Positions 23,691-47,061 of a DNA stretch of 64,000 nt are shown piece after piece. Positions within the stretch are counted from its first letter, which is position 1. Each line of letters starts with the position of its first letter. The stretch lies in contig CATNEN010000007.1 of NCBI GenBank assembly GCA_950097015.1, forward strand, positions 8,432,001 through 8,496,000, in the 5' to 3' direction. The notes below the pieces were generated by a model. That model was given only the letters and a program-made list of their open reading frames with translations. It was not told the DNA's origin and ran no database searches. This stretch comes from Macrostomum hystrix. Lineage: Eukaryota; Animalia; Platyhelminthes. The translations under genes and the position numbers were made by a program.

Positions 23691-24265
23691 GCACAGGTAC
23701 TCATGCACACAGACAGCTCAGAGCACAGGTACTCATGCACACAGACAGCTCAGAGCACAGGTACTCATGCACACAGACAGCTCAGAGCACAGGTACTCAT
23801 GCACACAGACAGCTCAGAGCACAGGTACTCATGCACACAGACAGCTCAGAGCACAGGTACTCATGCACACAGACAGCTCAGAGCACAGGTACTCATGCAC
23901 ACAGACAGCTCAGAGCACAGGTACTCATGCACACAGACAGCTCAAAGCACAGGTACTCATGTACACAGACAGCTCAGAGCACAGGTACTCATGCACACAG
24001 ACAGCTCAAAGCACAGGTACTCATGCACATAGACAGCTCAGAGCATAGGTACTCATGCACACAGACAGCTCAGAGCACAGGTACTCATGCACACAGACAG
24101 CTCAAAGCACAGGTACTCATGCACACAGACAGCTCAGAGCACAGGTACTCATGCACACAGACAGCTCAAAGCACAGGTACTCATGCACACAGACAGCTCA
24201 GAGCACAGGTACTCATGCACACAGACAGCTCAGAGCACAGGTACTTATGCACACAGACAGCTCAG
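23690..24265. repeat. Minisatellite, 32-bp unit (gcacaggtactcatgcacacagacagctcaga), ~18 copies
   Basis: Tandem array; degenerate units also at 23360-23420. Confidence 0.95.
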
Positions 24266-24733: not shown

Positions 24734-27700
24734 ATGGCGAGCGCAGTACTTCTGGCGTTCCTCGGCTTAGCAACCGCAATAGCGCCCCTAGCAACAGCGT
24801 CTAGGATAGTTATTCAGGGCAGCGGGGCCACGTTTCCTGAGAATGTGTACGTGGCAGCCTGCGACCGCTACAGGGTGTACAGGAGCGGCAAGGCGGATGT
24901 CACCATCTTGTACAGCGGCGTCGGCAGCGGCTCTGGCAGAGCCAACTTCCAGCGCGGCTACAAGAACCCGGCCGACCCCAGCTACATGCTGTTCGCCGGC
25001 AGCGACTCCGTCATGAGCAGCAAGGAGTACCTGGACTATCCAAGCAGCCAGATGTTCCCCACGCTGGCCGGGTGAGTCACGCGACGGCCTCCTGCGATTC
25101 TGGAATTCGGGAATCGGATTCAGGGAACAGGCTCCAGGGAACGGAATACTGAGCATCGGAATCTAGGACTGGGATTCTCGAAATGGGGCTCTGGGGATGA
25201 AGTTCTGAGAATGGGATTGGGGTTTTTGGATTGGGATTCTGCGATTGAGGTTCTGTGAACGGGATTCGACTGATGGGATTCTACAATTAGGATCCTCTGA
25301 ATGGTATTCTGGAATTAGGTCTTTAGGATTCCGGGAATAGAATTTGGGAAAATTGAATTCCGATAATGGGATTCTGGGAATGGTATTGTGGAAATAAAAT
25401 TCTGGTCATGGGATTCAGATTGGACTCTGGGAATGGGATTCAGGAATGGGATTCTCTGAATGGGATTGTGGAATTGGAATTCTTGGAATGGGATTCTGGA
25501 TGGGATTCTGGATGAGATTTTGGGAATGGGAGTGTGGGATTGGAATTTCGGGAATGGGATTCAGGATGCGATTCAGGATGGGATTGTGGAAATGGGATTC
25601 TGGGAATGGGATACAGGGTGAAATTCATTTAAAGATTGGGATTATGGGAACGGGGATCTAAAGGAGTGGGATTTGATGTTGTAGATTGGGTCGTAATGGA
25701 ATAGCAGGCAAGGCTTTGGCGAGATTTAGACCACAGACATGATTCATTGTGTCTAGTAGCCATTAAGCAGTCATCCAATTTTCGAAGTCACTCAACACTC
25801 AACTCACTCAAGTGGATGAGGCTCAGTGCTAACTAGAGTGCGCAACTGGCTGTCTCGGTTGGTATCGACCAAAATATTTCCAGAATAGAAAGCAAGTGCG
25901 CTGCAGCTTTGTTATCAATAAAAAGCGAGAAGCGGAAAGAAAACAGAAAGCCAACTGTGGCTGGCTGCTGGGGAAACCTTGGCACGGGGGAGTTGGATGG
26001 TGGTTGTGTTTTGTAGAAGACCGGGCAATTTTCTTTTTTTCTTCCTCTACAAGAACACTCCAGTCACACCGTTGGCTGCTCCAGCCTCAGTGCTGAGGTG
26101 CTGAGGCAACAGTTACTGAAGTGCAGCCTCAGTGCTATTAGAGGCCAGCGAAGCGACTCCAGAAATACTAAGATTAGAATTAAAGAGGATAAATAAACAC
26201 TTTTCAAACTTAACGAAACACGAGAATGGGAAAGCAACTTATAGATATTGTAATAAAAGTTCGGCCTGAATATTATTCACATTCGCGTTGTGAGCACGCT
26301 GAGCACGGAGAGCACCGTGAGTACTATGAGCAGTGTGAGCAGTGTGAGCAGTTTGAGCACGGAGAGCACCGTGAGCACTATGAGCAGTGTGAGCAGTGTG
26401 AGCAGTTTGAGCACGGAGAGCACCGTGAGCACTATGAGCAGTGTGAGCAGTGTGAGCAGTTTGAGCACGGAGAGCACCGTGAGTACTGTGAACATGGGGA
26501 GCGCCGTAAGCAGTTGGAGCACCGTTAGCAGTGTGAGCAGTTTGAGCACCATGGTGAAAACTGTGAGCAGTGTGAGAACTATAAGCAGTCTAAGCACCAT
26601 GGTGAGCACTGGGAGCACCGTTAGCAGTGTGAGCAGTATGAGCACCGTAGTGAGCATTGTGAGCAGTGTTAGCAGTTTGAGCACCATAGTGAGCAGTGTG
26701 AGCAGTGTGAGCAGTGTGAGCAGTAAAAGCAGTCTAAGCACTATGGTGAGCACTGGGAGCACCGTAAGCAGTGTGAGCAGTGTGAGCAGTATGAGCCTCC
26801 GTAGTGAGCATTGTGAGCAGTGTGAGCACCGTGAGAACTTCACTGCGGCTAGCAACCTGCGACGGCTTTTCCTACCTGTCCCTCATCCTACTTGTCTTTG
26901 CTTCTGCTCTCCGATTCTCCAGAAATTTCATCCGCATGCGGATACACGGGTGCAGCGGGGCCTCTCCCACTCGCATTGTTAGCCGCTTGGCCATCCCATA
27001 TGGAATATTTTTTCATCAGGCGCAAATCTTCCACCTGCTGCTGCAGGGCCGGCTTATTGTTTTGCCCTAACAATTTACTGCGCTTCCCAGCCGCTTCATC
27101 AGCCTGGCCCCAGCTCCATCTAGGGGCCGATGCTATTTTTAGCTCCAGATGACTAATATATGACTGATATTTATTTACCAGCCCAGCGGACAGCCATTGC
27201 ATCAAGCCATCAGCCTCACCTCGCCTCGCCTCTAGCGGATTATTGCACCCTCAGTGCCCGCACAATGCCTGCCTGCCTGTCAAAGCGCCGGCGTCATTCC
27301 GCTGGGCTGGACGTCATGAGAAGCGGTCCCTAATTAAATTAATGTGTTTGGGGACCAAGGCTCCGCAACGTGATCTCTGTTCATTTTTTTACTGTCCCGT
27401 ACCGTAACGTGTCCCGGGCAAGAGGCCCTGAGTTCGAACCCCGAGCGAGTTTTATTCCGTGCTCAACTGCATCAAACCGAGTTGGCTTCTCAATCGGCCT
27501 GATAATGAATTGACAAAATCAAAATTACTCAAATTCCTAGGATAAAAAATGAATTCACACCAAAAAGTGGCACCCCCATACATGCCTGCCAGCCTTTAGC
27601 AAAGCCGAATCCCAATAGAGGATCTGCGCCGGCATTAATGAACGCCGCCTCCACCACTGAGGCAATAGAAAGATTTGGCGATAAGATTAGGGAATAAAAT

Positions 27701-30700
27701 CCTCAAATCCCCCAGTGTTGACAGGTGGGCAAAGAGAAGGCGCGGCTGTTGTGTGCCTTGCCTCAATAATGCATGATGAGAAGCACGGCCATTGTGAACA
27801 GTGCTCACAGTTCTGGCTTGAGAACACTCGCAAGGCTTTAGCATGAGGCTGGCTTTTCGAAAGCTTTGGAAAAAACAGATCGACAAAGATTCGTTGGAGG
27901 TTTGGCTTCCATCTCCAATGCAACTGAGGCTTGGCTGCCATCTCCAATGCAACTGAGGCTTGGCTGCCATCTCCAATGCAACTGAGGCTTGGCTGCCATC
28001 TCCAATGCAACTGAGGCTTGGCTGCCATCTCCAATGCAACTGAGGCTTGGCTTCCATCTCCAATACAACTGAGGCTTGGCTTCCATCTCCAATGCAACTG
28101 AGGCTTGGCTTCCATCTCCAATGCAACTGAGGCTTGGCTGCCATCTCCAATACAACTGAGGCTTGGCTTCCATCTCCAATACAACTGAGGCTTGGCTTCC
28201 ATCTCCAATACAACTGAGGCTTGGCTGCCATCTCCAATACAACTGAGGCTTGGCTGCCATCTCCAATACAACTGAGGCTTGGCTGCCATCTCCAATACAA
28301 CTGAGGCTTGGCTTCCATCTCCAATACAACTGAGGCTTGGCTGCCATCTCCAATACAACTGAGGCTTGGCTGCCATCTCCAATGCAACTGAGGCTTGGCT
28401 GCCATCTCCAATGCAACTGAGGCTTGGCTGCCATCTCCAATGCAACTGAGGCTTGGCTTCGATCTCCAATACAACTGAGGTTTGGCTTCCATCTCCAATA
28501 CAACTGAGGCTTGGCTGCCATCTCCAATGCAACTGAGGCTTGGCTGCCATCTCCAATGCAACTGAGGCTTGGCTGCCATCTCCAGTACAACTGAGGCTTG
28601 GCTTCCATCTCCAATGCAACTGAGGCTTGGCTGCCATCTCCTGTCCAACTGAGGCTTGGCTGCCATCTCCAATGCAACTGAGGCTTGGCTGCCATCTCCA
28701 GTCCAACTGAGGCTTGGCTTCCATCTCCAGTCCAACTGAGGCTTGGCTGCCATCTCCAATGCAACTGAGGCTTGGCTGCCATCTCCAATGCAACTGAGGC
28801 TTGGCTTCCATCTCCAGTCCAACTGAGGCTTGGCTTCCATCTCCAGTCCAACTGAGGCTTGGCTGCCATCTCCAATACAACTGAGGCTTGGCTGCCATCT
28901 CCAGTCCAACTGAGGCTTGGCTTCCATCTCCAGTCCAACTGAGGCTTGGCTGCCATCTCCAATACAACTGAGGCTTGGCTTCCATCTCCAATACAACTGA
29001 GGCTTGGCTGCCATCTCCTGTCCAACTGAGGCTTGGCTGCCATCTCCAATGCAACTGAGGCTTGGCTGCCATCTCCAGTCCAACTGAGGCTTGGCTGCCA
29101 TCTCCAATACAACTGAGGCTTGGCTTCCATCTCCAATACAACTGAGGCTTGGCTTCCATCTCCAGTCCAACTGAGGCTTGGCTGCCATCTCCAATACAAC
29201 TGAGGCTTGGCTTCCATCTCCAATACAACTGAGGCTTGGCTGCCATCTCCTGTCCAACTGAGGCTTGGCTGCCATCTCCAATGCAACTGAGGCTTGGCTT
29301 CCATCTCCAATGCAACTGAGGCTTGGCTTCCATCTCCAATACAACTGAGGCTTGGCTGCCATCTCCAATGCAACTGAGGCTTGGCTGCCATCTCCTGTCC
29401 AACTGAGGCTTGGCTGCCATCTCCAATGCAACTGAGGCTTGGCTGCCATCTCCAGTCCAACTGAGGCTTGGCTTCCATCTCCAGTCCAACTGAGGCTTGG
29501 CTGCCATCTCCAATACAACTGAGGCTTGGCTGCCATCTCCAGTCCAACTGAGGCTTGGCTTCCATCTCCAGTCCAACTGAGGCTTGGCTGCCATCTCCAA
29601 TACAACTGAGGCTTGGCTTCCATCTCCAATACAACTGAGGCTTGGCTGCCATCTCCAATACAACTGAGGCTTGGCTGCCATCTCCAATGCAACTGAGGCT
29701 TGGCTGCCATCTCCAATGCAACTGAGGCTTGGCTGCCATCTCCAGTACAACTGAGGCTTGGCTTCCATCTCCAATGCAACTGAGGCTTGGCTGCCATCTC
29801 CTGTCCAACTGAGGCTTGGCTGCCATCTCCAATGCAACTGAGGCTTGGCTGCCATCTCCAGTCCAACTGAGGCTTGGCTTCCATCTCCAGTCCAACTGAG
29901 GCTTGGCTGCCATCTCCAATACAACTGAGGCTTGGCTGCCATCTCCAGTCCAACTGAGGCTTGGCTGCCATCTCCAATACAACTGAGGCTTGGCTGCCAT
30001 CTCCTGTCCAACTGAGGCTTGGCTGCCATCTCCAATGCAACTGAGGCTTGGCTTCCATCTCCAATGCAACTGAGGCTTGGCTGCCATCTCCAATGCAACT
30101 GAGGCTTGGCTGCCATCTCCAGTCCAACTGAGGCTTGGCTGCTATCTCCAATGCAACTGAGGCTTGGCTGCCATCTCCAATGCAACTGAGGCTTGGCTGC
30201 CATCTCCAATACAACTGAGGCTTGGCTTCCATCTCCAATACAACTGAGGCTTGGCTTCCATCTCCAGTCCAACTGAGGCTTGGCTGCCATCTCCAATGCA
30301 ACTGAGGCTTGGCTTCCATCTCCAGTCCAACTGAGGCTTGGCTGCCATCTCCAATACAACTGAGGCTTGGCTGCCATCTCCTGTCCAACTGAGGCTTGGC
30401 TGCCATCTCCAATGCAACTGAGGCTTGGCTTCCATCTCCAATGCAACTGAGGCTTGGCTGCCATCTCCAATGCAACTGAGGCTTGGCTGCCATCTCCAGT
30501 CCAACTGAGGCTTGGCTGCTATCTCCAATGCAACTGAGGCTTGGCTGCCATCTCCAATGCAACTGAGGCTTGGCTGCCATCTCCAATACAACTGAGGCTT
30601 GGCTGCCATCTCCAATACAACTGAGGCTTGGCTTCCATCTCCAGTCCAACTGAGGCTTGGCTGCCATCTCCAATACAACTGAGGCTTGGCTTCCATCTCC

Positions 30701-33700
30701 AATACAACTGAGGCTTGGCTGCCATCTCCAATACAACTGAGGCTTGGCTTCCATCTCCAATACAACTGAGGCTTGGCTGCCATCTCCAATACAACTGAGG
30801 CTTGGCTGCCATCTCCAATGCAACTGAGGCTTGGCTGCCATCTCCAATGCAACTGAGGCTTGGCTTCCATCTCCAATGCAACTGAGGCTTGGCTGCCATC
30901 TCCAATGCAACTGAGGCTTGGCTGCCATCTCCAATGCAACTGAGGCTTGGCTTCCATCTCCAATGCAACTGAGGCTTGGCTGCCATCTCCAATGCAACTG
31001 AGGCTTGGCTGCCATCTCCAATGCAACTGAGGCTTGGCTTCGATCTCCAATACAACTGAGGTTTGGCTTCCATCTCCAATACAACTGAGGCTTGGCTGCC
31101 ATCTCCAATGCAACTGAGGCTTGGCTGCCATCTCCAATGCAACTGAGGCTTGGCTGCCATCTCCAGTACAACTGAGGCTTGGCTTCCATCTCCAATGCAA
31201 CTGAGGCTTGGCTGCCATCTCCTGTCCAACTGAGGCTTGGCTGCCATCTCCAATGCAACTGAGGCTTGGCTGCCATCTCCAGTCCAACTGAGGCTTGGCT
31301 TCCATCTCCAGTCCAACTGAGGCTTGGCTGCCATCTCCAATACAACTGAGGCTTGGCTGCCATCTCCAGTCCAACTGAGGCTTGGCTTCCATCTCCAGTC
31401 CAACTGAGGCTTGGCTGCCATCTCCAATGCAACTGAGGCTTGGCTTCCATCTCCAATACAACTGAGGCTTGGCTGCCATCTCCTGTCCAACTGAGGCTTG
31501 GCTGCCATCTCCAATGCAACTGAGGCTTGGCTTCCATCTCCAATGCAACTGAGGCTTGGCTGCCATCTCCAATGCAACTGAGGCTTGGCTGCCATCTCCA
31601 ATGCAACTGAGGCTTGGCTTCCATCTCCAATGCAACTGAGGCTTGGCTGCCATCTCCAATGGAACTGAGGCTTGGCTGCCATCTCCAATGCAACTGAGGC
31701 TTGGCTGCCATCTCCAATACAACTGAGGCTTGGCTGCCATCTCCAATGCAACTGAGGCTTGGCTGCCATCTCCAATACAACTGAGGCTTGGCTTCCATCT
31801 CCAATGCAACTGAGGCTTGGCTGCCATCTCCAATGCAACTGAGGCTTGGCTGCCATCTCCAATACAACTGAGGCTTGGCTGCCATCTCCAATGCAACTGA
31901 GGCTTGGCTTCCATCTCCAATGCAACTGAGGCTTGGCTGCCATCTCCAATGGAACTGAGGCTTGGCTGCCATCTCCAATGCAACTGAGGCTTGGCTGCCA
32001 TCTCCAATACAACTGAGGCTTGGCTTCCATCTCCAATGCAACTGAGGCTTGGCTGCCATCTCCAATGCAACTGAGGCTTGGCTGCCATCTCCAATACAAC
32101 TGAGGCTTGGCTGCCATCTCCAATACAACTGAGGCTTGGCTGCCATCTCCAATACAACTGAGGCTTGGCTGCCATCTCCAATACAACTGAGGCTTGGCTG
32201 CCATCTCCAATACAACTGAGGCTTGGCTGCCATCTCCAATACAACTGAGGCTTGGCTGCCATCTCCGATACAACTGAGGCTTGGCTGCCATCTCCAATAC
32301 AACTGAGGCTTGGCTGCCATCTCCAGCTCTCGAGGTCTGACGTCAGTGAGCACGCATCGATCAGACGTTGAGCAGAGAAATTCCAACTTGGAGTCGCCGC
32401 CTTCCCCCTGACTTTGCAGTGTCGACTTTCTCCCATAATTAATGCCTAAATCCGAGGATGCAAATTTAGCTTTTCCTCTCTTGACTGCGTGCGACACTCT
32501 AGACAGCAGGTAATTCGACAACTGTTAGATGGGGAATGCACATGCTTGATTAGGACTAACTCAACAGCATCGATTTGAGCAGATTGAGTGGCCGGCCCGG
32601 CACCGCAGTTGGACCGCAGTAAAATCTTTCCTTATGGAGTTCGCAAAGCGTCACTTGCCCCAGCTTTGTTTTTCTGAAGCTATTCCGCTTGACTTGCCAG
32701 GAGGTCGACGGCGATGATGCTGTCCTGAGTTCTGGGAGTCCCGGATCTCATTTCATCAGCGAGTGAAACAAATGTTCGCCATCATTGATTAACTCTCTAA
32801 TTAAAACTGTTTAGTTGGAGTTCCACCGGACTTTAGAAAATTCCGCAGCTAATCAAAACTGTTTAGTTGGAGTTCCACCGGACTTTAGAAAATTCCGCAG
32901 CTAATCAAAACTGTTTAGTTGGAGTTCCACCGGACTTTAGAAAATTCCGCAGCTAATCAAAACTGTTTAGTTGGAGTTCCACCGGACTTTAGAAAATTCC
33001 GCAGCTAATCAAAACTGTTTAGTTGGAGTTCCACCGGACTTTAGAAAATTCCGCAGCTAATCAAAACTGACCTTGAAATCAGCCTTCAAAACTCAAGGCT
33101 TCATTATCAAATTAAATTTGTACTTTTAATTTTTACTCACCAAATGTGTCACCAAATGATGTGCCTTAGCCTGCAGCCCAACTGCAATTAATATTATCAT
33201 TACAAGTATTAACGTAGCTTGGCGGTCACCCGGAACCCGCAGAGCAATGGCCGTGGCCTACCACCCGCCGTCATCCGCCTCCAACCGGTTGAATTTGCGG
33301 CGCCAGACCCTCGTGGACATTTACATGGGCCGGGTGACTCACTGGGACGACCCGACCATCGCGGAGCTGAACCCGAACACCAGCCTGCCGCACCATGCCA
33401 TCCACCCCATGGCCCGCATGGACAAGTCCGGCTCCACCTCCGTGTTCACCTCGGCGCTGAGCGCCTTCTCCGCCGAGTGGAGGCTCAAACCGGGCGAGTT
33501 CGAGACTGAGTTCAACACGGCCACCTGGAGCCACCCAAGGTGGAACAACTCGGTGGTGAAGCTGTTCGCTAAGGGCACCGAGGGACTCACCTCCCTGCTC
33601 ACCAGCATCCGAGACTCCATCGCCTACATATCGGCCTCGGACCTCAAGCTGGACGGCAGCGGCCTCATGAGCCTGGCGCTGGTGCAGAACGCCAAAGGCA

Positions 33701-36700
33701 GCTTCGTGGACTGCACCGTGCCGGCTTCAGTGCAGGCCGCCATGGACTACTTCGCCGGGTCCATGGACTCTAGACTCACCGCGCAACTTATCGACGCGCA
33801 GTCCATTGAAGCCTATCCCATAGCAACCTATACCTACCTGATCATCAACATGAACATGACAAGCAGGTACATCTCTTGAATTACTGAAAACATGTTCGCC
33901 TCTCAGTTTTCGATTTGATCCTGGTTTCATGGCAGCGGTTGTAGCCCAGTGCATGGGTTGTAGCCTAGTGCCTGGGTTGTAGCCTAGTGCATGGGTTGTA
34001 GCTCAGTGCATGGGTTGTAGCCCAGAGCATGGGTTGTAGCCTAGTGCATGGCTTGTAGCTCAGTGCATGGATTGTAGCTCAGTGCATGGGTTGTAGCCCA
34101 GTGCATGGGTTGTAGCTCAGTGCATGGGTTGTAGCTCAGTGCATGGGTTGTAGCTCAGTGCATGGGTTGTAGCCCAGTGCATGGGTTGTAGCTCAGTGCA
34201 TGGGTTGTAGCTCAGTGCATGGGTTGTAGCCCAGTGCATGGGTTGTAGCCCAGTGCATGGGTTGTAGCCTAGTGCATGGCTTGTAGCTCAGTGCATGGAT
34301 TGTAGCTCAGTGCATGGGTTGTAGCCCAGTGCATGGGTTGTAGCTCAGTGCATGGGTTGTAGCTCAGTGCATGGGTTGTAGCTCAGTGCATGGGTTGTAG
34401 CCCAGTGCATGGGTTGTAGCTCAGTGCATGGATTGTAGCTCAGTGCATGGGTTGTAGCCCAGTGCATGGGTTGTAGCTCAGTGCATGGGTTGTAGCTCAG
34501 TGCATGGGTTGTAGCTCAGTGCATGGGTTGTAGCCCAGTGCATGGGTTGTAGCCCAGAGCATGGGTTGTAGCCCAGAGCATGGGTTGTAGCCTAGTGCAT
34601 TGGTTGTAGCCTAGTGCATGGGTTGTAGCCTAGTTCATGGGTTGTAGCCCAGAGCATGGGTTGTAGCCTAGTGCATGGGTTGTAGCTCAGTGCATGGGTT
34701 GTAGCTCAGTGCATGGGTTGTAGCCCAGTGCATGGGTTGTAGCTCAGTGCATGGGTTGTAGCTCAGTGCATGGGTTGTAGCCCAGTGCATGGGTTGTAGC
34801 CCAGTGCATGGGTTGTAGCCCAGAGCATGGGTTGTAGCCTAGTGCATGGGTTGTAGCTCAGTGCATGGATTGTAGCTCAGTGCATGGGTTGTAGCCCAGA
34901 GCATGGATTGTAGCCTAGTGCATGGGTTGTAGCTCAGTGCATGGATTGTAGCTCAGTGCATGGGTTGTAGCCCAGTGCATGGGTTGTAGCTCAGTGCATG
35001 GGTTGTAGCCCAGTGCATGGGTTGTAGCCCAGTGCATGGGTTGTAGCCCAGAGCATGGGTTGTAGCCTAGTGCATGGGTTGTAGCTCAGTGCATGGATTG
35101 TAGCTCAGTGCATGGGTTGTAGCCCAGAGCATGGATTGTAGCCTAGTGCATGGGTTGTAGCTCAGTGCATGGATTGTAGCTCAGTGCATGGGTTGTAGCC
35201 CAGTGCATGGGTTGTAGCCTAGTGCATGGGTTGTAGCCCAGAGCATGGGTTGTAGCCTAGTGCACGGGTTGTAGCTCAGTGCATGGGTTGTAGCTCAGTG
35301 CATGGGTTGTAGCCCAGTGCATGGGTTGTAGCTCAGTGCATGGGTTGTAGCCTAGTGCATGGGTTGTAGCCTAGTGCATGGATTGTTGCTCAGTGCATGG
35401 GTTGTAGCCTAGTGCACGGGTTGTAGCCTAGTGCATGGGTTGTAGCCTAGTGCATGGATTGTTGCTCAGTGCATGGGTTGTAGCTCAGTGCATGGGTTGT
35501 AGCCTAGTGCATGGGTTGTAGCCTAGTGCATGGATTGTTGCTCAGTGCATGGGTTGTAGCCTAGTGCACGGGTTGTAGCCCAGTGCATGGTTTGTAGCTC
35601 AGTGCATGGGTTGTAGCTCAGTGCATGGGTTGTAGCTCAGTGCATGGGTTGTAGCCCAGAGCATAGGTTGTAGCCTAGTGCATGGGTTGTAGCTCAGTGC
35701 ATGGGTTGTAGCCCAGTGCATGGGTTGTAGCTCAGTGCATGGGTTGTAGCCTAGTGCATGGGTTGTAGCCTAGTGCATGGATTGTTGCTCAGTGCATGGG
35801 TTGTAGCCTAGTGCACGGGTTGTAGCTCAGTGCATGGGTTGTAGCTCAGTGCATGGGTTGTAGCCTAGTTGAGTGGTTGTGGCCTAGTAAAATGAGTTCC
35901 AGAATTAGCTGGGTGGTAATTTAGTCTGGCTGTGGCGTCCGCCTAGTCCATGGACTGAACTGCCGTACGCAGGCTGCATATCTAACCCAACTGGGGCAGG
36001 TGTAATCATCTGTGGATGGAGAGTCGATTTCTGTGCGAGTGCATTCCACATTAAATTAAATGTAACATTCCACATGTAACATTCCACATGTAACATTCCA
36101 CATGTAACATTCCACATGTAACATTCCACATGTAACATTCCACATGTAACATTCCACATGTAACATTCCACATGTAACATTCCACATGTAACATTCCACA
36201 TGTAACATTCCACATGTAACATTCCACATGTAACATTCCACATGTAACATTCCACATGTAACATTCCACATGTAACATTCCACATGTAACATTCCACATG
36301 TTAAGGTTGAGAAAAATGAGTACCAGGTCGGCAAATTGTGTAACGGGTTTGTCTAACCGGTTGGCAGTCACCTGATCACCTGATAAAAATCATTGTTAGA
36401 TGCGAGGAGGCCACGGAGTTCTACGGCTTCCTGGACTGGTTCTACTCTGACCCGGAGCCCGCGGGCATCATTCGCAAGAACTCGTTCGTGCCGCTGAGCA
36501 ATGCTGTGCAGCTGAAGGTGCGCGAGTTCGTGCTCAATCGGGCCATGTGCGGCGGCAGCTACCTGCGCGACCTCTGGCTTGAGAAGCGCCGCCTCGAAGA
36601 ACTAAAATTGGAGCCGTCGAACATGTCCTGGATGACGCCGACGCTGACGTCTGTCGGCATCGGCCTGCTGGTGGCGTGCGGCCTTGGCACCTACATCGCC

Positions 36701-39700
36701 AGGCAGAGCTACCGGCAGTGGAAACTGCTCAATCAGGTGAGAATACTTGTGGGAACCCGGAGGCAGTTGAAACCTCCCCTGGGGTTCGAACCCAGGACAC
36801 TCGGTTCGTCTTAGATTCCTAGATGCCAAAGTAGTGAAAGTGCAAACCAGCCGGACACCCCGACATTCGCGCAGGACCTGTGGCTAGTGCCCATCGAGGA
36901 GATCATGTTCTTCGCTCCGCGCAGCCGCGGCAACCGAAGCCGATCGATGCGCAGTTTCAGCATGCACGAGTCGGACACAATCTCTGTCGGCACGCAGTTG
37001 ACCGAAGACGAAGCCGGCAGCGAGGAGGACTACGACGCAGACACGGTGCTGCAGTGGCCGGGCAAGTTCCGGGAGGCCAGCGTAGGCGTCCGTCTGCTGC
37101 AGACGCACCGCACGCAAGACAGATTCGACATTCGCACCAAGAAGCTGCTGCAGTGGATGATGGACCGGGTCCACCACAACAATGTGGCCGCCTTCCACGG
37201 CCTGACGCAGGTCGAGAGGGACTTCTTTGTGGTGTCCGAGTATTGCGAGCGCGGCCCGCTGAGCAAGGTGGTGCACAACCCCAAGCTGGACCTGCCGCCA
37301 ACAGTCAAGGGTTCCATTGTGATGGACATCTGCCAGGCTGTCAGCTTCCTGCACAGCCAGGGCGTTGTGCACGGCATGCTGCGGACCAACGCCTGCCTCA
37401 TCGACAGCAAGTGGACGGTGAAGCTGGCGGACTGGGAGTACTTCATATTTTACTCCACCACCACCCGGGCCTTCAAGAATGCCCGTCCGGCGCTGCAGTG
37501 CGTGCGCGAGGCGGTGCTGGGCGACTATCCCAGCGAGCAGCAGGTGCTGGACTTTGATATTTACGTCGCGCCGGAGATCCTGCGCTCCGAGTTGCAGTGG
37601 CCGCCGGACCAGAGCTCGGACATCTACTCATGTGCCATCATCTTCTACGAAATCTTCACCAGAAGCATTCCCTTTACCAACTACAGAGAGGATCTGAGCA
37701 CGGCCAGGGATCTGCTCACCGCCATCGTGAAAAACTCGCTGCGGCCGGACCAGCTGCAGGACATTCCCATTACCTTCCGCCAGGTGCTGGAAACCTCCTG
37801 GTCGGACGATCCCAGATCGCGGCCGAGCGCCGAGAACCTCACCAAGCTGGCCAAGAAGTGCTTCCCCAGGCGCAAGAACATGCTGCAGAGCATGTTCGAC
37901 AGCCTGGAGTCCGAGCACCTGCTGCTGGAGAACGAGATGCTGGCGGTGAACTCCGCCATGGAGGAGCAGCGAGACACCTACCAAGCCATGATCCGCTCCA
38001 ACCTGCCCGAGTTCTACGCCAGCCGGCTGCTCAACGACCAGCCCTTCCAGCCAGAGTACAAGCGCCTCACGGGGGTGCTATTCGTGCGCCTGGACGGCCT
38101 CGCCCGCCTCAGCGACATCAACCGGCCGTTCGAAGTGAACGCAGCATCCAACGCCTACTATCACGTGTTCAACAGCATCGCCGCAGGCTACAAGGACATG
38201 CACATGCGGCATGCCTTCGGCGACTTCTTCCTCTTCTTGTGCGGCCTGCGAAGAAAGTCTTCGCGGCGCAGCGTGCGAGATCTGCTGCGCCTCGCCGAGC
38301 ACATCATCCGCCTAGTTCGCGCCGGCGGCGTTCATGTCGACGATGGCACCGGCGGCGGCGATGGCGCAGCCATGTCTCTGGCGGCCTGTGCCGGGCTGCA
38401 CTGCGGTCCGGTGTCCATCGGGGTCATCACGTCTGGCGTGCCGACGCTGTTCACAGGCGGCGGCGCTCTCCATGTGGCCCTTCAGCTGGCGCTGTCAGCG
38501 GAGAAGCACCGCGTGCTCGCCTCCGAGACAGTCCGGCGGGCGCTCGCTGACGATGCCGAGGAGGACAACAACAATGAACCGGCAGCCACTGCATTGTCTG
38601 ACGAGGCAGCACAGAAATCGAGCGATGCGCCGGTGGCGGCAGAGTCGGAGCGGCAGACAGGCGACGGAGCTGACGGTGACCTCTCCATTGAGGTGACGTC
38701 GGCGCCAGTTCCGCAATCGCCCGCGAAGTTCGCCATCGACCCGAAGGCTTCAGCGGCTGCGAAGGTGGCGGCAGCAGCTGCTGCCACGGCCGCGGCGGCA
38801 GCCAATGCAGCAGCAGCAGCGGCGGCAGCTGCCGCAGCCGCAGCTTCTGGTGAGACGCCAGCTGTGGAGGCGGTGGCGGTCGCAGCCAAAAGTGCGCCCG
38901 AGGTCAAGAAGAAGAAGAAGAAAAGGAAGGATGAGGAGCGGAGGCTGCGCTTCGACAAGCGGCTCTGCCCGCTCTCGGTGAGTGCTGTTGCTGGTCAGCG
39001 CAAATTTCCAACAACGAATGCGGGTTATTAATTTCGTTGGGCAGTGGAATTCAATTTTGTGATTGCCCTTGTCTGACTGTATCAGCTTCTGCCTCACGTA
39101 GCCTATTCATTGTCTCGCTTATTCTTTAGAAAATGACAAGAAAAAATGGACTAGGCTCTCAATTTTGAGAGTGCATCACAATGCAGCTTTACTGTGGGCA
39201 TTTGCTGTCTGAGTAAGCTGGCCGATAGTTAGTGACGCAGCGCTCACCTGCCTGCAGGTCCGAGATCACTCCACCTGACCCCTCAAATTCTATTTTAATG
39301 ATCGCCAATGAGCCATCCGCCTAGAAGGCTTCTCGCAACAGCCTGGAGAATTTTCGAGAGCATCGATTCTACCCTGGGGCGAGCTCGATAAACCCCATCC
39401 CCAGCTCTATGCCCAAATGATTAATGAGGGCCAGCACAGGTAGGCGTTCAGAGCCGTCTAGAAATTATCAACTTTCAGTAATAAAAAAAGGAATGAAAAA
39501 TAAACAGCGAGTTCACAATTCACAAATTTGGCGCAGGCAAGGTGAGGTGAACCGGTCGGACATTCTCATCAATGCCAAACCTCGAATAATTGAATTTTTG
39601 TGACCGTCTGTTGCTCTTTTATGCGAATCGAACAGAACCCTAGGCTTCTGAGTGGCGCTGTCAATATTTGAGCTGGGCGTCACCAGCCAAGATGTGATCG

Positions 39701-41052
39701 ATGGCCCTCGCGGCAGAACCCCCCCGCCCCCGGTGTTATGAAATTACGCGCGGAACTCCGCTCACAAATTTCATTGCTGGAAAAATCGATTGCCGAACTC
39801 TAGTTGAGAACTCGCGAGGATAAACAACTGCAGCCAGAACTCTCTGGCCAGACTGAGGGGAGTGACGCGCTGCGGATGGGAAAACTGTTTGGGCCAAATA
39901 AGTTCACTGATAATGGGCTAATGTTCCCAGCGGACGGATTACACAAGGCCAGGACAACTGTCTGCTTGAAGGCAGCAGTTTTTGTCTGCTGTGTTGCGCC
40001 CTTCAGACCTGGCTGAGCAAAGCCGGGCTGACGGAGCTCAGTGCTGATGGGTGGGGCCTGGGGTCCTGGACTCGGGCTAAAAGCGACAACTCCCGTTCAG
40101 CTCGCGGAAAGCTTTCAACTCGTCTGGTTGTTCCCCTCCGGCGCGAGCACATTCAGTCTCACAATGCGCAGATAAAAGCTTCTTAAATGCCAGGTCGCAG
40201 TTTCTGGATCGATTCGGCCGATTTGCAAGTTCAGACAAGTCGGTCATTGCCGTCTGCGAAGCATCATCAGGGACTTTGCATTATTAAACTTCCATCCTTA
40301 AAAATTTGCCTCAATAGTTCGGAATTTCGCGGGGATAAATCGCTTTCATTGATATTTCCCCATTCGGACATTTACTCCCTCAGGACGGCAGGTACGTCAC
40401 AACTTACTGCGTCTCCAGTGTGCGCGATGATGCGGACTATTCGGCGCCTCCTCAGGACGCCGAGGACGTCCTCGCAGCATCAGACGGGGACCCGGATGAG
40501 GATCCCGATGCAGACGCGGATGCGCATCTGACCTTTGGAATTCGCCGCACGGCCCACTCGCCACCGCCGGGCCCCGCACTGGGCAGCCGCCGCTACCGTC
40601 CGCAGAATGACAGCATCTCCAATGAAACGGCAGACGACGTCGTGCCAGCCACCGCGTCAATCTCGCCGGAGCGAGTCACTGTCACCATCATTGACGAAGT
40701 GCCGCCGTCACGGCCGACGGTCGAAGCGCAGAAATCGCTGCCGCGAAGCCTCCAGAAGACTCGACTTACTGGTGGCGTATCCGAAGCCGCTCCGTTTCGC
40801 ATCTTCATGTCGGGCGAGTCGCTGGAGATGTCGGTGTTTGGTCAGCGCAGCAACGGCGGCGTCAGCCGGAAGTCCATCCTGAGCCGGAACAACGGTGCCA
40901 ACGGGTCAGCAAATGGCAAGAAGAAGGTGCTATCCTTCTGCGACGACTCCGCCATAGCGGTGGTCATCGAGGACGGCGTCACAAACCGAGCATTCAACGG
41001 CGACTCGGTGTTCGAGGAAGACTCTGGTGGCAGCGTTGTGTGCGAACTATAA
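24734..41052 (+). CDS. Single-pass receptor: signal peptide + PstS-type phosphate-binding ectodomain + TM + kinase-homology domain + coiled coil + degenerate guanylyl-cyclase domain + disordered tail (~1356 aa)
   Basis: Exons 24734-25071, 33243-33866, 36400-36736, 36875-38977, 40384-41052; GT-AG and phase-consistent (4071 nt). PstS motifs GSGATFP, YSGVGSGSG, FAGSD, IYMG..THWDDP.I..LNP, RMDKSGST, AYPI..YTYL. TM TLTSVGIGLLVACGLGTYIA. rGC-type kinase homology SEYCERG, HGMLRTNACLID, YVAPEIL, DIYS. Cyclase remnants FGD..L.CGL, GLHCGPV..GVI. Confidence 0.88.
25100..25680. repeat. Degenerate short-unit repeat (tgggattctggaa)
   Basis: Repeated gggatt/ggaat motifs at the start of receptor intron 1. 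Confidence 0.75.
26290..26835. repeat. Degenerate 9-bp repeat (gtgagcagt/gtgagcacc)
   Basis: Intronic array producing the Ser/Thr- and EQC-rich ORFs. Confidence 0.9.
27896..32326. repeat. Satellite, 29-bp unit (gccatctccaatgcaactgaggcttggct), ~150 copies, receptor intron 1
   Basis: Highly homogeneous array; the unit has no stop codon in any minus-strand frame, hence the 592-1628 aa ORFs. Confidence 0.98.
32803..33070. repeat. Tandem repeat, 52-bp unit, 5 identical copies
   Basis: aaaactgtttagttggagttccaccggactttagaaaattccgcagctaatc. Confidence 0.95.
33937..35870. repeat. Satellite, 19-bp unit (gggttgtagctcagtgcat), ~100 copies, receptor intron 2
   Basis: Tandem array. Confidence 0.97.
36060..36300. 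repeat. Minisatellite, 14-bp unit (tgtaacattccaca), perfect
   Basis: ~17 identical copies. Confidence 0.97.
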
Positions 41053-41112
41053 GCTGGCTCGCTGTACGCTTCCAGTTCCATTAGACTCTGGCTGACCACT
41101 GGGCGAAATGTG

Positions 41113-41325
41113 TACCACTCCGATGCGCATTGTGGACCACTCGGATGCGCATTGTGGACCACTCCGATGCGCATTGTGAACCACTCCGATGCGCATTGTG
41201 AACCACTCCGATGCGCATTGTGGACCACTCCGATGCGCATTGTGAACCACTCCGATGCGCATTGTGGACCACTCCGATGCGCATTGTGGACCACTCCGAT
41301 GCGCATTGTGGACCACTCCGATGCC
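41113..41325. repeat. Minisatellite, 22-bp unit (ccactccgatgcgcattgtgga) in the receptor 3' region
   Basis: ~10 copies starting ~60 bp after the stop codon. Confidence 0.93.
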
Positions 41326-43850: not shown

Positions 43851-44720
43851 CTGTCAATGCAAGTCTGTCAATCAGCGAATTAATTTATCGACTCTTGTCA
43901 AACAATCTCAGCAGCAGCAGCAGCAGGAGCATTCAATGAAAATGCTCCAACAGAGGGCAACTGATAAGAGAAGCAAGGGTTTAGCCATCTCGACTTGCTG
44001 GGGCTCGCAAACTATCGACATTGCGCAACTGAGAGAGCGGCACGAGCCCACGCGAACCCTGAGCCTCTGTGAAAACAGGCCAACAACTTGCAGTAATTAC
44101 AGCGAGAGTAGAAAAGCGAGAGTGAAAGAGTCTCTCAATGGTTGCCATGACAACAGCAACGGAGAGTTGCAGAACCGCTGTCATGTGAAACAGCGAGGCG
44201 GGAGAGGGCCCAAGTGCGGAGCGCACGTGGTCAGATCGGGACCAGGGCGAGCGGAAAAAGAGTTATTACTGCTCTAGAGTGAATATCGATCGATAGCGCC
44301 AGTAGCGGCTGGGGCGGCCCTGTAAACACAATAAATAGGTGCGCTATGGCTGTACAGCTGCAGGGCTGTCATTAAACACGCCTCAGGCCAACTCAACTTT
44401 GGCCAGAGCTCGCTGGGAAGGAGGGTGACGCAGAGATTTGGGGCTCTGGAGAGGTCACCTGCATTTTATGATACCTGTGAGCCTCGTGCGCGAGTCCCTT
44501 ATCTAATCTGCACGGGTAACGAAAGACTGAATCGGGCCACCCTTTCCTGCTCTCCCCTCCCACCTTGCCGTGCCCCCTGCCAGAGCAGTTGAGATAAATC
44601 GCTGCAGATTAGCATGCTGGCAGGCAGGCGGGTTAGAGCAAGGAATTGAAGCTAGCCAAAAACTCGACTCCGCTGCGATTGCAGGTCCACAGAGAAGCGC
44701 TTAGCAACCGAAAAGCAACA

Positions 44721-45854
44721 ATGCGCCACCACCGCCCCCTGCTGCTTCTGCTGCTGCTGACTGTGGCGGCGCCGCTCACCACAATGTCCGCTCCGCTCAC
44801 GGATGCGTCTTTCGGAGCCGTCAACTGCGGCTACGACTGGCAGCAGTCCATCTGCAAGCTGGCGCCCGCCGACTTCAGCTTCAACGACGGCTGCAACACC
44901 GTCACGTGCGACGGCCGAGGCGAGTTCATCACCACCCTGATGGCTTGCCCGGAGCCGGCCACCGAGCAGGACCGCCAGCGCTGCCAGACAATCCGCGAGA
45001 ACGTGCAGCTCCGATTGGACGAGTCCACAGGCGTCACCTGCCCGATGCTGTCGATGAGAGCTGTCTGCGCCACCGCAGCCCGAGGCTTCACTTACAACGA
45101 CGGCTGCAACACTGTTGTCTGCGACGGCGCCGGCTCCGGAACGACCACGCTGATGTACTGCCCCGAGCCCTCCCGGCCCACCGAGACCGCCCTGTGCGAG
45201 CGGCGCACCGAGCGCCTCATCGGGCGACTTGAGCCCAGGACCTGCTCCGGCATCAATTCTACTCAGGTCTGCCTGGCCGAGGGCATCGGGTTCAGATTCA
45301 GCGACGGCTGCAACACAGTCGAGTGCCGGGAGAGCGGCACGTGGACCACAACTCTCATGTCCTGCCCGCCAGCCGGTAACGAGAGCGCCATTTGCCAATG
45401 GCACCGCAGCAAGGCCGGCCCGACGGTCGTCGACACCCTGGACCTGTCTTGCCCGGAGCTGGCCATGTCGCGGGTTTGCAAGGCCCAGACCATCGGCTTT
45501 CGCTACAACGACGGCTGCAATGACGTGCACTGCGCCTCGCCCGGCAGGGGCTCCAGCACCACCCGCCTGTGCCGAGTGGCCAATGCGGCTGAGGCGGAGC
45601 GCAAGTGCAACGCCTCCAAGGTCGCCATGGAGGAGAAGCGGAGCCAGTCAAAGCAGCGCACCAGCTGCCTGACGGCCGCCGACGTCTGCAGGCGGGCCGG
45701 AGAGCGCAAATCCTTCTTCGACGGCTGCAACTATTGCTTCTGCATGGGCATCAACCGCGCCGGCTGCACCAGGCGAGCCTGCCAGCCCTACTTCAGCACC
45801 GAGGAGGAATTCAGGAGAGAGTGCGTGCGGCGCAAGGCGGGCATCATCAACTAG
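44721..45854 (+). CDS. Secreted multi-domain pacifastin-like serine protease inhibitor A (377 aa, 5 modules, intronless)
   Basis: Signal peptide MRHHRPLLLLLLLTVAAP; four F.(Y/F)(N/S)DGCN.V.C...TT(L/R) modules; terminal canonical pacifastin C..DGCNYCFC......CTRRAC. Confidence 0.8.
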   Translation: MRHHRPLLLLLLLTVAAPLTTMSAPLTDASFGAVNCGYDWQQSICKLAPADFSFNDGCNTVTCDGRGEFITTLMACPEPATEQDRQRCQTIRENVQLRLDESTGVTCPMLSMRAVCATAARGFTYNDGCNTVVCDGAGSGTTTLMYCPEPSRPTETALCERRTERLIGRLEPRTCSGINSTQVCLAEGIGFRFSDGCNTVECRESGTWTTTLMSCPPAGNESAICQWHRSKAGPTVVDTLDLSCPELAMSRVCKAQTIGFRYNDGCNDVHCASPGRGSSTTRLCRVANAAEAERKCNASKVAMEEKRSQSKQRTSCLTAADVCRRAGERKSFFDGCNYCFCMGINRAGCTRRACQPYFSTEEEFRRECVRRKAGIIN

Positions 45855-46987
45855 AGAGCCTCTGAAGGGATTCAACAACATACTGAATGATTGTCGGGTA
45901 GGGTCCTAGTACAGAGTTCCAGTCTACTGCAGCTCCAGTGGCATTCCCTATAGTTAGTAGAACAAAGCTTTGAAGTTTGACCTCGCGAACTGTTTTGGTT
46001 CCAATTGCGCAAGGAAATTCTTGGGGTGAAAATGGAAGCCCCATTTGTTTCAATTTTGCTATTCGTTTTTTCATCCTCTTTTATACTCGTATTGATACGT
46101 GTCGTTCAAATAATATTCACATCTCCGTCTCTTTCTCGCGTTTTTGCAGTGCCCTTGCGCAACCTCGTCTCACTCATTCGCGACATAATTCGCCCTCATT
46201 CGCGGATCCAATATTTTTTACCTGACCTCTATTTTGCTAGACCCAAGCACTGATTGAAGCCCGCTGAATTGATCTCAATAGACCCAAATTGTCTCCTCCG
46301 TGTACATGCGACACATGCTTCTCCCGAGCGCATCGGCATGCCATAATCGCTTAATTCCCCAGCCCAGTATTTTCTGCGGCAAGCCGCCTCTGTAAAGAAA
46401 TACCTGAGCAACTGTGCCTTATTTCTTAGAATGCTGAGCACGCACAGCAGGCGAGAAACAATTGGACTCGCCCCAGCCGCTCCCACCTCGCCATCTGATC
46501 GCCAGAGCCATCCGTCGCTTTTTATTTGCGTTACAAACGAAAAACTACAAAAATAAATAAATCAATCGATTGCTTTCGGATTTTGCTTTTTTCACTCCGG
46601 CCATCTGTCAGCCAGCTGGACATTGTGCTTGTTGCTGACAGCCGAATGCCACAGTCACTGGCTAATTGTCGCCCAGAGCGGCTGGACTTGCGCCATAAGC
46701 CATTCTGGCCAGTGCTGACAGGGCAGACAACTGCGACTCCGTGACCCTCCCCCTCCCCGCTACTCCGGTGAGCGGCAACTCCGACAGGCAATTACAGCGA
46801 CTGTCGGCGATCCGGAAAGGCCGCAGGGCAATTTCCACTGCAGCGTTTACCGCCCGCAAGCGGTCAACAACAGGAAGCAGCGCTTTTGAGGCCGGCAATT
46901 TTCGATTCTCTGGGAACCGGTTTCAAGCGTCATCGACTGCTGATTCACATAGCCCCCTCACCCTGCCCAAATTTGGTGAATTTAGCG

Positions 46988-46994
46988 TATAAAA
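46988..46994 (+). promoter_or_regulatory. TATA box candidate for inhibitor B
   Basis: TATAAAA ~70 bp upstream of ATG 47062; AATAAA at 48074-48079 downstream of the stop. Confidence 0.5.
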
Positions 46995-47061
46995 TCCGGC
47001 ACCTTCTCGCAAAATTCACGCGCTGTTTCTGTGGTTAAAATCCATTAAAAACTGCAAAGCG

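What the first reader, a model, noticed from the sequence alone, without database searches (positions are those of the whole stretch)
24734..41052. Candidate animal cell-surface phosphate sensor: PstS ectodomain fused to a receptor guanylyl-cyclase-type intracellular module
Seen: five phase-compatible exons, split by 8.2-kb and 2.5-kb satellite-filled introns, so the ORF track shows only disconnected pieces. They encode signal peptide - PstS-like domain - one TM helix - kinase-homology domain - coiled coil - cyclase-like domain. Known: receptor guanylyl cyclases normally carry an ANF-receptor (type I periplasmic-binding fold) ectodomain. PstS is the type II-fold phosphate-binding subunit of bacterial PstSCAB, whose ligand residues in E. 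coli are T10, F11, S38, D56, R135, S139, G140, T141. The equivalent positions here are GA-T-F, G-S-G, FAGS-D and R-M-D-K-S-G-S, i.e. conserved apart from T141->S. The ectodomain has N-glycosylation sequons (NTS, NNS, NMT, NMS). Inference: a bacterial-type Pi-binding domain has been recruited as the ligand-binding domain of a metazoan receptor. How animals sense extracellular Pi is poorly understood.
Basis: partly seen in the sequence, partly recalled or inferred. Interest (0 to 1): 0.92.

Follow-up and report, generated by a model that had tools for sequence, protein, structure and literature searches.

The report
Flatworm receptor with phosphate-binding outer domain
This flatworm gene is real and expressed, and encodes a cell-surface receptor whose outer part is a bacterial-style phosphate-binding (PstS) domain with its phosphate pocket intact, joined to the inner part of a guanylyl-cyclase receptor whose enzyme site is dead; relatives occur in molluscs, annelids and ribbon worms, and I found no paper that describes them.

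Summary
Five GT..AG-bounded, phase-compatible exons (24734-25071, 33243-33866, 36400-36736, 36875-38977, 40384-41052) give a 1356-codon frame. Transcript-like contigs from four public runs confirm three of the four junctions. A Macrostomum lignano gene model is collinear across all four.

- **Outer domain:** exons 1-2 match PstS models. Exon 2 folds at pLDDT 93 onto PstS crystal structures (TM 0.82). All eight E. coli PstS phosphate ligands are kept (T141 is Ser), here and in 19 relatives.
- **Inner module:** exon 4 folds like the intracellular module of human GC-A. Six of seven cyclase catalytic or specificity residues are replaced, so this receptor probably makes no cGMP itself.
- **Family:** the build (PF12849 + kinase-homology + cyclase) occurs in molluscs, annelids, nemerteans and Macrostomum, auto-named "ANP receptor-like". 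About a quarter of members, including the named annelids, keep a canonical cyclase.
- **Literature:** ten full-text searches found no paper on this build. The closest published parallel is the NIT-domain guanylyl cyclases.

Best reading: a candidate extracellular phosphate receptor, a new variant of receptor guanylyl cyclases with non-catalytic output in this flatworm. Phosphate binding is untested. The joined protein was never searched or folded; exons were handled separately.

The parts
24734..25071 (+). Exon 1: start codon, signal peptide (about 24734-24802) and the first part of the PstS domain, with the equivalents of E. coli T10, F11, S38 and D56
   Evidence: TIGR00975 positions 1-76, E 8.8e-7; hydrophobic N-terminus; ligand columns; donor GTGAGT at 25072
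25072..33242 (+). Intron 1 (8171 nt), filled with tandem repeats including a 29-nt unit x153 at 27897-32325
   Evidence: junction not covered by reads; supported by the collinear M. lignano model
33243..33866 (+). Exon 2: core of the PstS domain with the equivalents of R135, D137, S139, G140 and T141 (Ser here); sequons NTS, NNS, NMT
   Evidence: TIGR00975 positions 81-266, E 3e-40, and PF12849 44 bits; PDB PstS-1 E 4e-19; fold pLDDT 93 with Foldseek TM 0.82 to 7dm1_A
33867..36399 (+). Intron 2 (2533 nt) with a 19-nt x102 satellite and a 14-nt x19 satellite
   Evidence: junction 33866/36400 shown by the loose end of X1 record 1
36400..36736 (+). Exon 3: C-terminal part of the ectodomain (family-conserved Cys pair, sequon NMS) and the single TM helix (about 36644-36700) followed by basic residues
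   Evidence: aligns with the relatives' ectodomain end and TM; Kyte-Doolittle window; no HMM hit on its own
36737..36874 (+). Intron 3 (138 nt)
   Evidence: joint GT..AG in contigs of runs X1 and X3
36875..38977 (+). Exon 4: juxtamembrane stretch, kinase-homology domain (about 37046-37864; HGxL in place of HRD, DWEY in place of DFG), long helix (about 37880-38002), degenerate cyclase-like domain (about 38042-38554), then an Ala/Lys-rich low-complexity stretch (about 38561-38944)
   Evidence: Pfam; alignment to GC-A; catalytic columns; fold pLDDT above 90 in both domains, with best Foldseek hits the GC-A intracellular domain at E 1.6e-29
38978..40383 (+). Intron 4 (1406 nt)
   Evidence: joint GT..AG in contigs of runs X2 and X4; sequence
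40384..41052 (+). Exon 5: probable last strand of the cyclase fold (inference by eye) followed by an acidic and Ser-rich tail and the stop codon
   Evidence: reads joint; 58% identity to M. lignano residues 1399-1628; no family hit

Best explanation
This is an expressed, single-copy flatworm gene for a type I membrane receptor of 1356 residues. Its glycosylated ectodomain is a PstS-type (type II periplasmic-binding fold) domain with an intact orthophosphate pocket. Its cytoplasmic part is the kinase-homology - helix - cyclase module of receptor guanylyl cyclases. Inferred mechanism: extracellular inorganic phosphate closes the two PstS lobes, and this change passes through the single TM helix to the cytoplasmic module, as ligand binding does in receptor guanylyl cyclases. 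The kinase-homology domain lacks the catalytic Asp, and the cyclase-like domain lacks one metal Asp, both transition-state residues (Asn, Arg) and the guanine-specifying Glu and Cys. The protein therefore most likely makes no cGMP itself. It probably signals non-catalytically, as a regulatory or heteromeric partner of active cyclases or through its conserved fold and tail. It belongs to a spiralian family whose annelid members keep a canonical cyclase and are the likeliest true phosphate-regulated guanylyl cyclases. Shown: gene model, expression, folds, residue conservation, family range. Inferred: the ligand, the signalling route and the output.
For: Gene and splicing. PstS identity: TIGR00975 3e-40 and PF12849 over its cut-off; PDB PstS hits; exon-2 model pLDDT 93 with the top 49 Foldseek hits all phosphate-binding proteins. 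All eight E. coli Pi ligands are kept here and in 19 relatives from four phyla. Extracellular setting: signal peptide, four sequons, TM helix and a family-invariant Cys pair. Intracellular module: Pfam; the best structural match is the GC-A intracellular domain. Dead cyclase: D->R, E->H, R->T, C->F, N->H, R->Q against GC-A and canonical relatives; it is the weakest of 66 cyclase matches in this genome. Purifying selection: exon 4 is 84% identical to M. lignano, against 55-73% for the ectodomain exons, with the same degenerate residues except one. Family. In the set examined, 12 of 56 members plus the reference keep the canonical residues DEDRCNR, and the named ones are annelids. The host chromosome context is animal: RNR, pacifastin and helicase genes. 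It is the only PF12849 locus in the genome.
Against: No binding or signalling data exist. Exon 3 and exon 5 match no family model on their own. The exon 1/2 junction is not shown by reads. RNA support comes from one study, low-depth contigs and runs whose kind is not on record. With both catalytic domains degenerate, the output is unknown. Conserved pocket residues would also fit arsenate, or a structural bound anion.
Confidence: 0.6

Rival explanations
1. The ectodomain keeps the PstS fold but recognises another ligand (arsenate, a phosphorylated organic molecule, pyrophosphate or polyphosphate) or holds an anion only for structure. The receptor would then report something other than free orthophosphate.
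For: Only sequence and fold were tested. T10 is Ser in most relatives and T141 is Ser here. The ectodomain exons diverge faster (55-73%) than exon 4.
Against: All eight ligand positions are conserved across four phyla, including the D56 equivalent. By established PstS work (my knowledge), D56 selects protonated phosphate over sulfate. All top structural neighbours are orthophosphate binders.
Confidence: 0.2
2. It is a non-signalling surface protein: a membrane-tethered phosphate scavenger or decoy, or a dominant-negative subunit that simply silences active cyclases, with the cytoplasmic module a decaying relic.
For: The catalytic residues of both the kinase-like and cyclase-like domains are lost. 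The cyclase score is the lowest in the genome.
Against: The cytoplasmic module is the most conserved part between the two Macrostomum species (84%). It is predicted to fold confidently (pLDDT above 90). Degenerate-cyclase members persist in several phyla. A relic would decay.
Confidence: 0.12
3. It is a working phosphate-regulated guanylyl cyclase despite the substitutions.
For: The fold is retained and one metal Asp is kept. Family members in annelids look fully active.
Against: Six of seven catalytic or specificity positions are replaced, including the Asn and Arg needed for the transition state and one metal Asp. The protein could supply neither half of a class III cyclase active site (established mechanism, my knowledge).
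Confidence: 0.05
4. It is an artefact: bacterial contamination, mis-assembly or a dead pseudogene.
For: PstS is typically prokaryotic. The exons are separated by long satellites.
Against: The gene has spliceosomal introns with canonical ends, spliced transcript contigs in four runs, open frames throughout, flanking animal genes, and collinear orthologues in M. lignano and other phyla.
Confidence: 0.02

Closest known systems
Receptor (membrane) guanylyl cyclases, e.g. human GC-A/NPR1
   Same: Single-pass topology and the juxtamembrane - kinase-homology (HGxL) - long helix - class III cyclase fold. The best structural match of exon 4 is the GC-A intracellular domain (E 1.6e-29).
   Different: The ectodomain is a PstS-type (type II) binding fold, PF12849, rather than ANF_receptor PF01094. 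The cyclase catalytic residues are lost. There is a long low-complexity stretch and tail after the cyclase core.
NIT-domain guanylyl cyclases of animals (PMC7400543; bioRxiv 10.1101/2023.08.02.551600)
   Same: They are animal membrane cyclases of the ANP-receptor group that carry a sensor domain otherwise known from bacterial oxyanion (nitrate/nitrite) sensing. The critical ligand residues are conserved, and the proteins are proposed as environmental or chemical sensors.
   Different: They have a NIT four-helix-bundle domain flanked by two TM helices and an active cyclase (shown for Platynereis NIT-GC1), and they occur in most animal phyla. Here the sensor is a PstS domain, there is one TM helix, the named members are spiralians only, and the cyclase is dead in this species.
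Bacterial PstS (E. coli PstS, M. tuberculosis PstS-1)
   Same: Same fold (TM 0.82, rmsd 2.0 A) and all eight phosphate ligands.
   Different: The domain is not a free or lipid-anchored partner of a PstCAB transporter. It is a glycosylated ectodomain with an extra conserved Cys pair, fused to a TM helix and a signalling module, in a spliced animal gene.
P. aeruginosa CtpL chemoreceptor activated by Pi-loaded PstS (review PMC8050422)
   Same: PstS is used as the phosphate-recognition element of a transmembrane signalling receptor.
   Different: There it acts in trans between two proteins and feeds chemotaxis. Here it is fused in one polypeptide in an animal.
Fungal class C GPCRs with a PBP_like_2 N-terminal domain (SPPG_06488 in PMC3251606; Endogone and chytrid proteins P0167, P0171)
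   Same: A PstS-type domain serves as the ectodomain of an opisthokont receptor. These domains are the sister group of the animal clade in my tree.
   Different: The output is seven-transmembrane rather than single TM plus kinase-homology plus cyclase. They are also uncharacterised functionally.

Membership tests
PstS / PBP_like_2 phosphate-binding domain family | Significant match to the family profile | tested here: met
   PF12849 scores 44.2 bits against a cut-off of 27 on exon 2. TIGR00975 gives 3e-40 (exon 2) and 8.8e-7 (exon 1). The equivalog whole-protein cut-off (205 bits) is not reached by the separate exons.
PstS / PBP_like_2 phosphate-binding domain family | Type II periplasmic-binding fold superposable on PstS | tested here: met
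   The exon-2 model has pLDDT 93. Against 7dm1_A it gives E 9.7e-16, TM 0.82 and rmsd 2.0 over 194 columns. The top 49 hits are all phosphate-binding proteins. Only exon 2 was folded; the joined domain was not.
PstS / PBP_like_2 phosphate-binding domain family | Phosphate-ligand residues (E. coli T10, F11, S38, D56, R135, S139, G140, T141) | tested here: met
   Here they read T, F, S, D, R, S, G, S. The 19 relatives show the same pattern apart from single exceptions (F11 to I in one; a gap at positions 10-11 in one truncated model), mostly with S at position 10.
PstS / PBP_like_2 phosphate-binding domain family | Works with a PstCAB ABC transporter | tested here: not met
   The domain is fused to a TM helix and a signalling module in an animal gene. 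It is a member of the domain family, not of the transporter system.
PstS / PBP_like_2 phosphate-binding domain family | Binds orthophosphate | not testable with these tools
   This needs recombinant ectodomain and ITC, MST or DSF.
Receptor guanylyl cyclase | Single TM followed by kinase-homology domain, helix and class III cyclase fold | tested here: met
Receptor guanylyl cyclase | ANF_receptor (type I) ligand-binding ectodomain | tested here: not met
   No PF01094 hit. PF12849 is found instead.
Receptor guanylyl cyclase | Catalytic residues (two metal Asp, Asn, Arg; Glu/Cys for GTP) | tested here: not met
   The seven positions read RHDTFHQ against the canonical DEDRCNR. The Pfam score is 24-28 bits, against 222 bits for the Owenia member.
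NIT-domain guanylyl cyclase | NIT domain (PF08376) between two TM helices | tested here: not met
   No NIT hit in any exon, and only one TM helix.

The most novel reading that the evidence does not exclude
PstS-ectodomain receptors are a dedicated extracellular orthophosphate receptor family of spiralian animals. Members with a canonical cyclase (annelids) would turn external phosphate into cGMP directly. The more numerous members with a degenerate cyclase, including this flatworm gene, would pass on the phosphate signal without catalysis, for instance by pairing with and gating active receptor cyclases.
Probability: 0.4. Interest if true: 0.85.

Novelty: new variant of a known kind. Interest (0 to 1): 0.76.

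Why it matters
How animal cells detect extracellular phosphate is still debated (review PMC8199323, found). No receptor with a dedicated high-affinity phosphate-binding domain appeared in my searches. This family offers a concrete, testable candidate: a pocket whose chemistry is known at atomic detail from bacterial PstS, wired to a classic animal signalling module. It sits in tractable animals, since (my knowledge) Macrostomum lignano has RNAi and transgenesis, and annelid larvae have cGMP imaging assays already used for NIT-GCs. It also shows that receptor cyclases repeatedly swapped in microbial-type oxyanion sensors (NIT, now PstS). Most family members have lost cyclase catalysis while keeping the fold, which raises the question of how such pseudo-cyclase receptors signal. 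Database names such as "atrial natriuretic peptide receptor-like" hide the family and should be corrected.

Tried and rejected
- **Papers:** ten full-text searches combining PstS, PBP_like_2, PF12849, phosphate-binding, guanylyl/guanylate cyclase and spiralian taxa found nothing on this build. Subscription-only papers are not covered.
- **Taxon names:** Absence outside Spiralia is therefore not shown.
- **ESM Atlas:** the search on a relative's ectodomain returned only generic prokaryotic PBP clusters.
- **Tree:** the first maximum-likelihood run timed out, so a FastTree tree was used.
- **Exons 3 and 5:** they have no Pfam or NCBIfam hit on their own.
- **Exon 5 alignment:** automatic fragment alignment of exon 5 was plainly wrong because of low complexity. 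The idea that its first residues are the last cyclase strand rests on reading by eye.
- **Reads:** the stretch did not include intron 2 or exon 1.
- **Rejected readings:** contamination or pseudogene (spliced, expressed, conserved), and an active cyclase (catalytic residues gone).
Full report
**Organism and setting.** Earlier notes of this scan call the genome a flatworm of the genus Macrostomum. The nearest database protein is from M. lignano, at 55-84% identity per exon, so this is a congener. The window is contig 7 of a 220-Mb, 42-contig assembly. The flanking genes are ordinary animal genes: ribonucleotide reductase large subunit, pacifastin-domain genes and a helicase.

**Gene model.** Read directly, the exon borders are 24734-25071, 33243-33866, 36400-36736, 36875-38977 and 40384-41052. 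The introns are GTGAGT..CAG (8171 nt), GTACAT..TAG (2533 nt), GTGAGA..CAG (138 nt) and GTGAGT..CAG (1406 nt). The phases are compatible, and the coding sum is 4071 nt, which is 1356 codons plus a stop. Introns 1 and 2 are mostly tandem repeats.

**Expression and splicing.**
- Four public runs of one study hold the exon-4 sequence. Their kind is not on record.
- Their contigs skip GT..AG introns, so they behave as transcript assemblies.
- Laid on 36310-41100 (4791 letters, under the operators' limit), they show the joint 36736/36875 in two runs and 38977/40384 in two other runs.
- One contig runs from exon 3 into 134 loose letters. The 30 shown equal the last bases of exon 2, which gives junction 33866/36400.
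- Overlapping contigs therefore tie the PstS exons to the kinase exon.
- The exon 1/2 junction was outside the stretch. It rests on canonical signals, phase, the step from PstS model position 76 to 81, and the M. lignano model A0A1I8HE86, which is collinear across all four junctions.

**Ectodomain.**
- Profile hits: exon 1 matches the PstS equivalog TIGR00975 at positions 1-76. Exon 2 matches positions 81-266 (3e-40) and Pfam PBP_like_2 above its cut-off.
- Solved structures: the best matches are M. tuberculosis PstS-1 and E. coli PstS.
- Fold: exon 2 alone, folded with an alignment of 61 PstS-domain proteins, gives pLDDT 93 and pTM 0.90. It superposes on PstS-1 (TM 0.82, rmsd 2.0 A over 194 columns), and the first 49 Foldseek hits are all phosphate-binding proteins.
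- Ligands: in an alignment anchored on E. coli K-12 PstS taken from its genome record, the eight phosphate ligands read T, F, S, D, R, S, G, S here. The same pattern holds in 19 relatives from four phyla, apart from single exceptions.
- Extracellular setting: a hydrophobic N-terminal signal sequence, four N-glycosylation sequons and one TM helix followed by basic residues are present. A family-invariant Cys pair is also present.
- Exon 3 has no HMM hit alone but aligns with the relatives' ectodomain end and TM helix.

**Cytoplasmic module.**
- Exon 4 matches kinase profiles (2e-25) and, weakly, Guanylate_cyc (24 bits).
- Its model is confident in the kinase-like domain, in one long helix and in the cyclase-like domain (pLDDT about 90 or more), and disordered in the low-complexity parts.
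- Its best structural matches are the intracellular domain of human GC-A, aligned over more than 500 columns.
- The kinase-like domain has HGxL where kinases have HRD, and DWEY in place of DFG, as in the whole family.
- Against GC-A and canonical relatives, the cyclase positions D, E, D, R, C, N, R read R, H, D, T, F, H, Q.
- By the established two-subunit mechanism of class III cyclases (my knowledge), such a domain can supply neither the metal-binding half nor the transition-state half of an active site.
- It is the weakest of 66 exon-level cyclase matches in this genome.
- The module is nevertheless the most conserved part between the two Macrostomum species (84%), with nearly the same degenerate residues. 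It is therefore maintained, not decaying.
- A separate first-stage note on this window also called the cyclase dead and split by an Ala/Lys-rich insert. I confirm the first point. I only partly confirm the second: the low-complexity stretch is there, but the match of the first residues of exon 5 to the last cyclase strand is by eye.

**Family.**
- A search of 1.8 billion representatives with exon 2 gave 4139 hits. Among the best 150 hits, 53 also carry the exon-4 module.
- Named members with PF12849 + PF07714 + PF00211 come from several phyla:
  - gastropods, bivalves and a chiton;
  - nemerteans (Tubulanus, Lineus);
  - annelids (Owenia, Dimorphilus, Paralvinella);
  - M. lignano.
- They are auto-named "atrial natriuretic peptide receptor-like", "retinal guanylyl cyclase-like" or "speract receptor". 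No named member lies outside Spiralia, but many members are unnamed.
- This genome has one PstS locus only.
- Of 56 members with an alignable cyclase domain, 12 keep all seven canonical residues, as does the Owenia reference. The named ones among them are annelids. The rest are degenerate to varying degrees (Pfam scores are 222 bits for Owenia, 103 for Tubulanus and 24 here).

**Origin.** In a FastTree tree of PstS domains, the receptor-linked animal sequences fall in one clade of 84 rows (support 98), 67 of which carry the kinase-like module. The sister group is the PstS domain of fungal class C GPCR-like proteins, followed by protist multi-PstS proteins. The E. coli sequence and the two named bacterial multi-PstS proteins lie on the other side of the midpoint root. 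This argues against a recent bacterial transfer into flatworms. The tree is quick, unrooted in fact, and full of unnamed rows.

**Literature.**
- Ten full-text searches found no paper on a PstS-cyclase receptor.
- The nearest published parallel is the NIT-domain guanylyl cyclases: animal membrane cyclases with a bacterial-type nitrate/nitrite sensor, one of which makes cGMP in response to an NO donor.
- A PBP_like_2 domain on a chytrid class C GPCR was listed in 2012.
- In P. aeruginosa, Pi-loaded PstS activates the chemoreceptor CtpL.

**Verdict.** It is a candidate extracellular phosphate receptor and a new variant of receptor guanylyl cyclases, with a probably non-catalytic output in this species. 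Ligand and output remain to be tested.

Noticed in passing
window 27897-32325 (also 33937-35869, 26289-26839, 25365-25612, 36042-36301, 41109-41324, 24000-24265): The introns and flanks of the gene are packed with short-unit satellites (29-nt x153, 19-nt x102, and others). The 29-nt array creates a spurious 1628-aa open frame on the minus strand.
   Followed up: partly
window 38787-38839: High-depth contigs from all four runs (depth 12-53) touch only a GC-rich Ala-codon repeat about 27-30 nt long and then run on into unlike sequence. This is most likely cross-matching of other transcripts to low complexity, not part of this mRNA (tables 5c, 7, 8).
   Followed up: no
window 38080 and 38146; 40576 and 40687: Single-base differences between the transcript contigs and the assembly (A>C twice, G>A, A>G) at low depth. 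They could be alleles or errors.
   Followed up: no
window 4155-6309 (+): Exons of a ribonucleotide reductase large-subunit gene (ATP-cone, all-alpha and barrel domains).
   Followed up: no
window 44646-48006 (+): Pacifastin-inhibitor domain ORFs, also noted by the first-stage reader as variant pacifastin modules.
   Followed up: no
window 52515-54547 (-): ORF with a helicase C-terminal domain. The adjacent ORF has no family hit.
   Followed up: no
P0153 (M. lignano UniProt A0A1I8HE86, 1867 aa): The M. lignano model carries about 270 extra N-terminal residues with a GRAM-domain hit and extra C-terminal sequence. It is probably a merged gene model. Pfam did not report PBP_like_2 for it at E <= 0.01.
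   Followed up: partly
P0003, P0031, P0083, P0065, P0195, P0173 (database proteins): Other eukaryotes carry unusual PstS-domain builds: four tandem PstS domains in Chromosphaera perkinsii and Entosiphon sulcatum; two PstS domains with a weak kinase-like match in Fabomonas tropica; PstS with a PARP domain in an unnamed protein (P0065); PstS with PF07699 in Palpitomonas; and PstS with a cyclase in a metagenome protein.
   Followed up: partly
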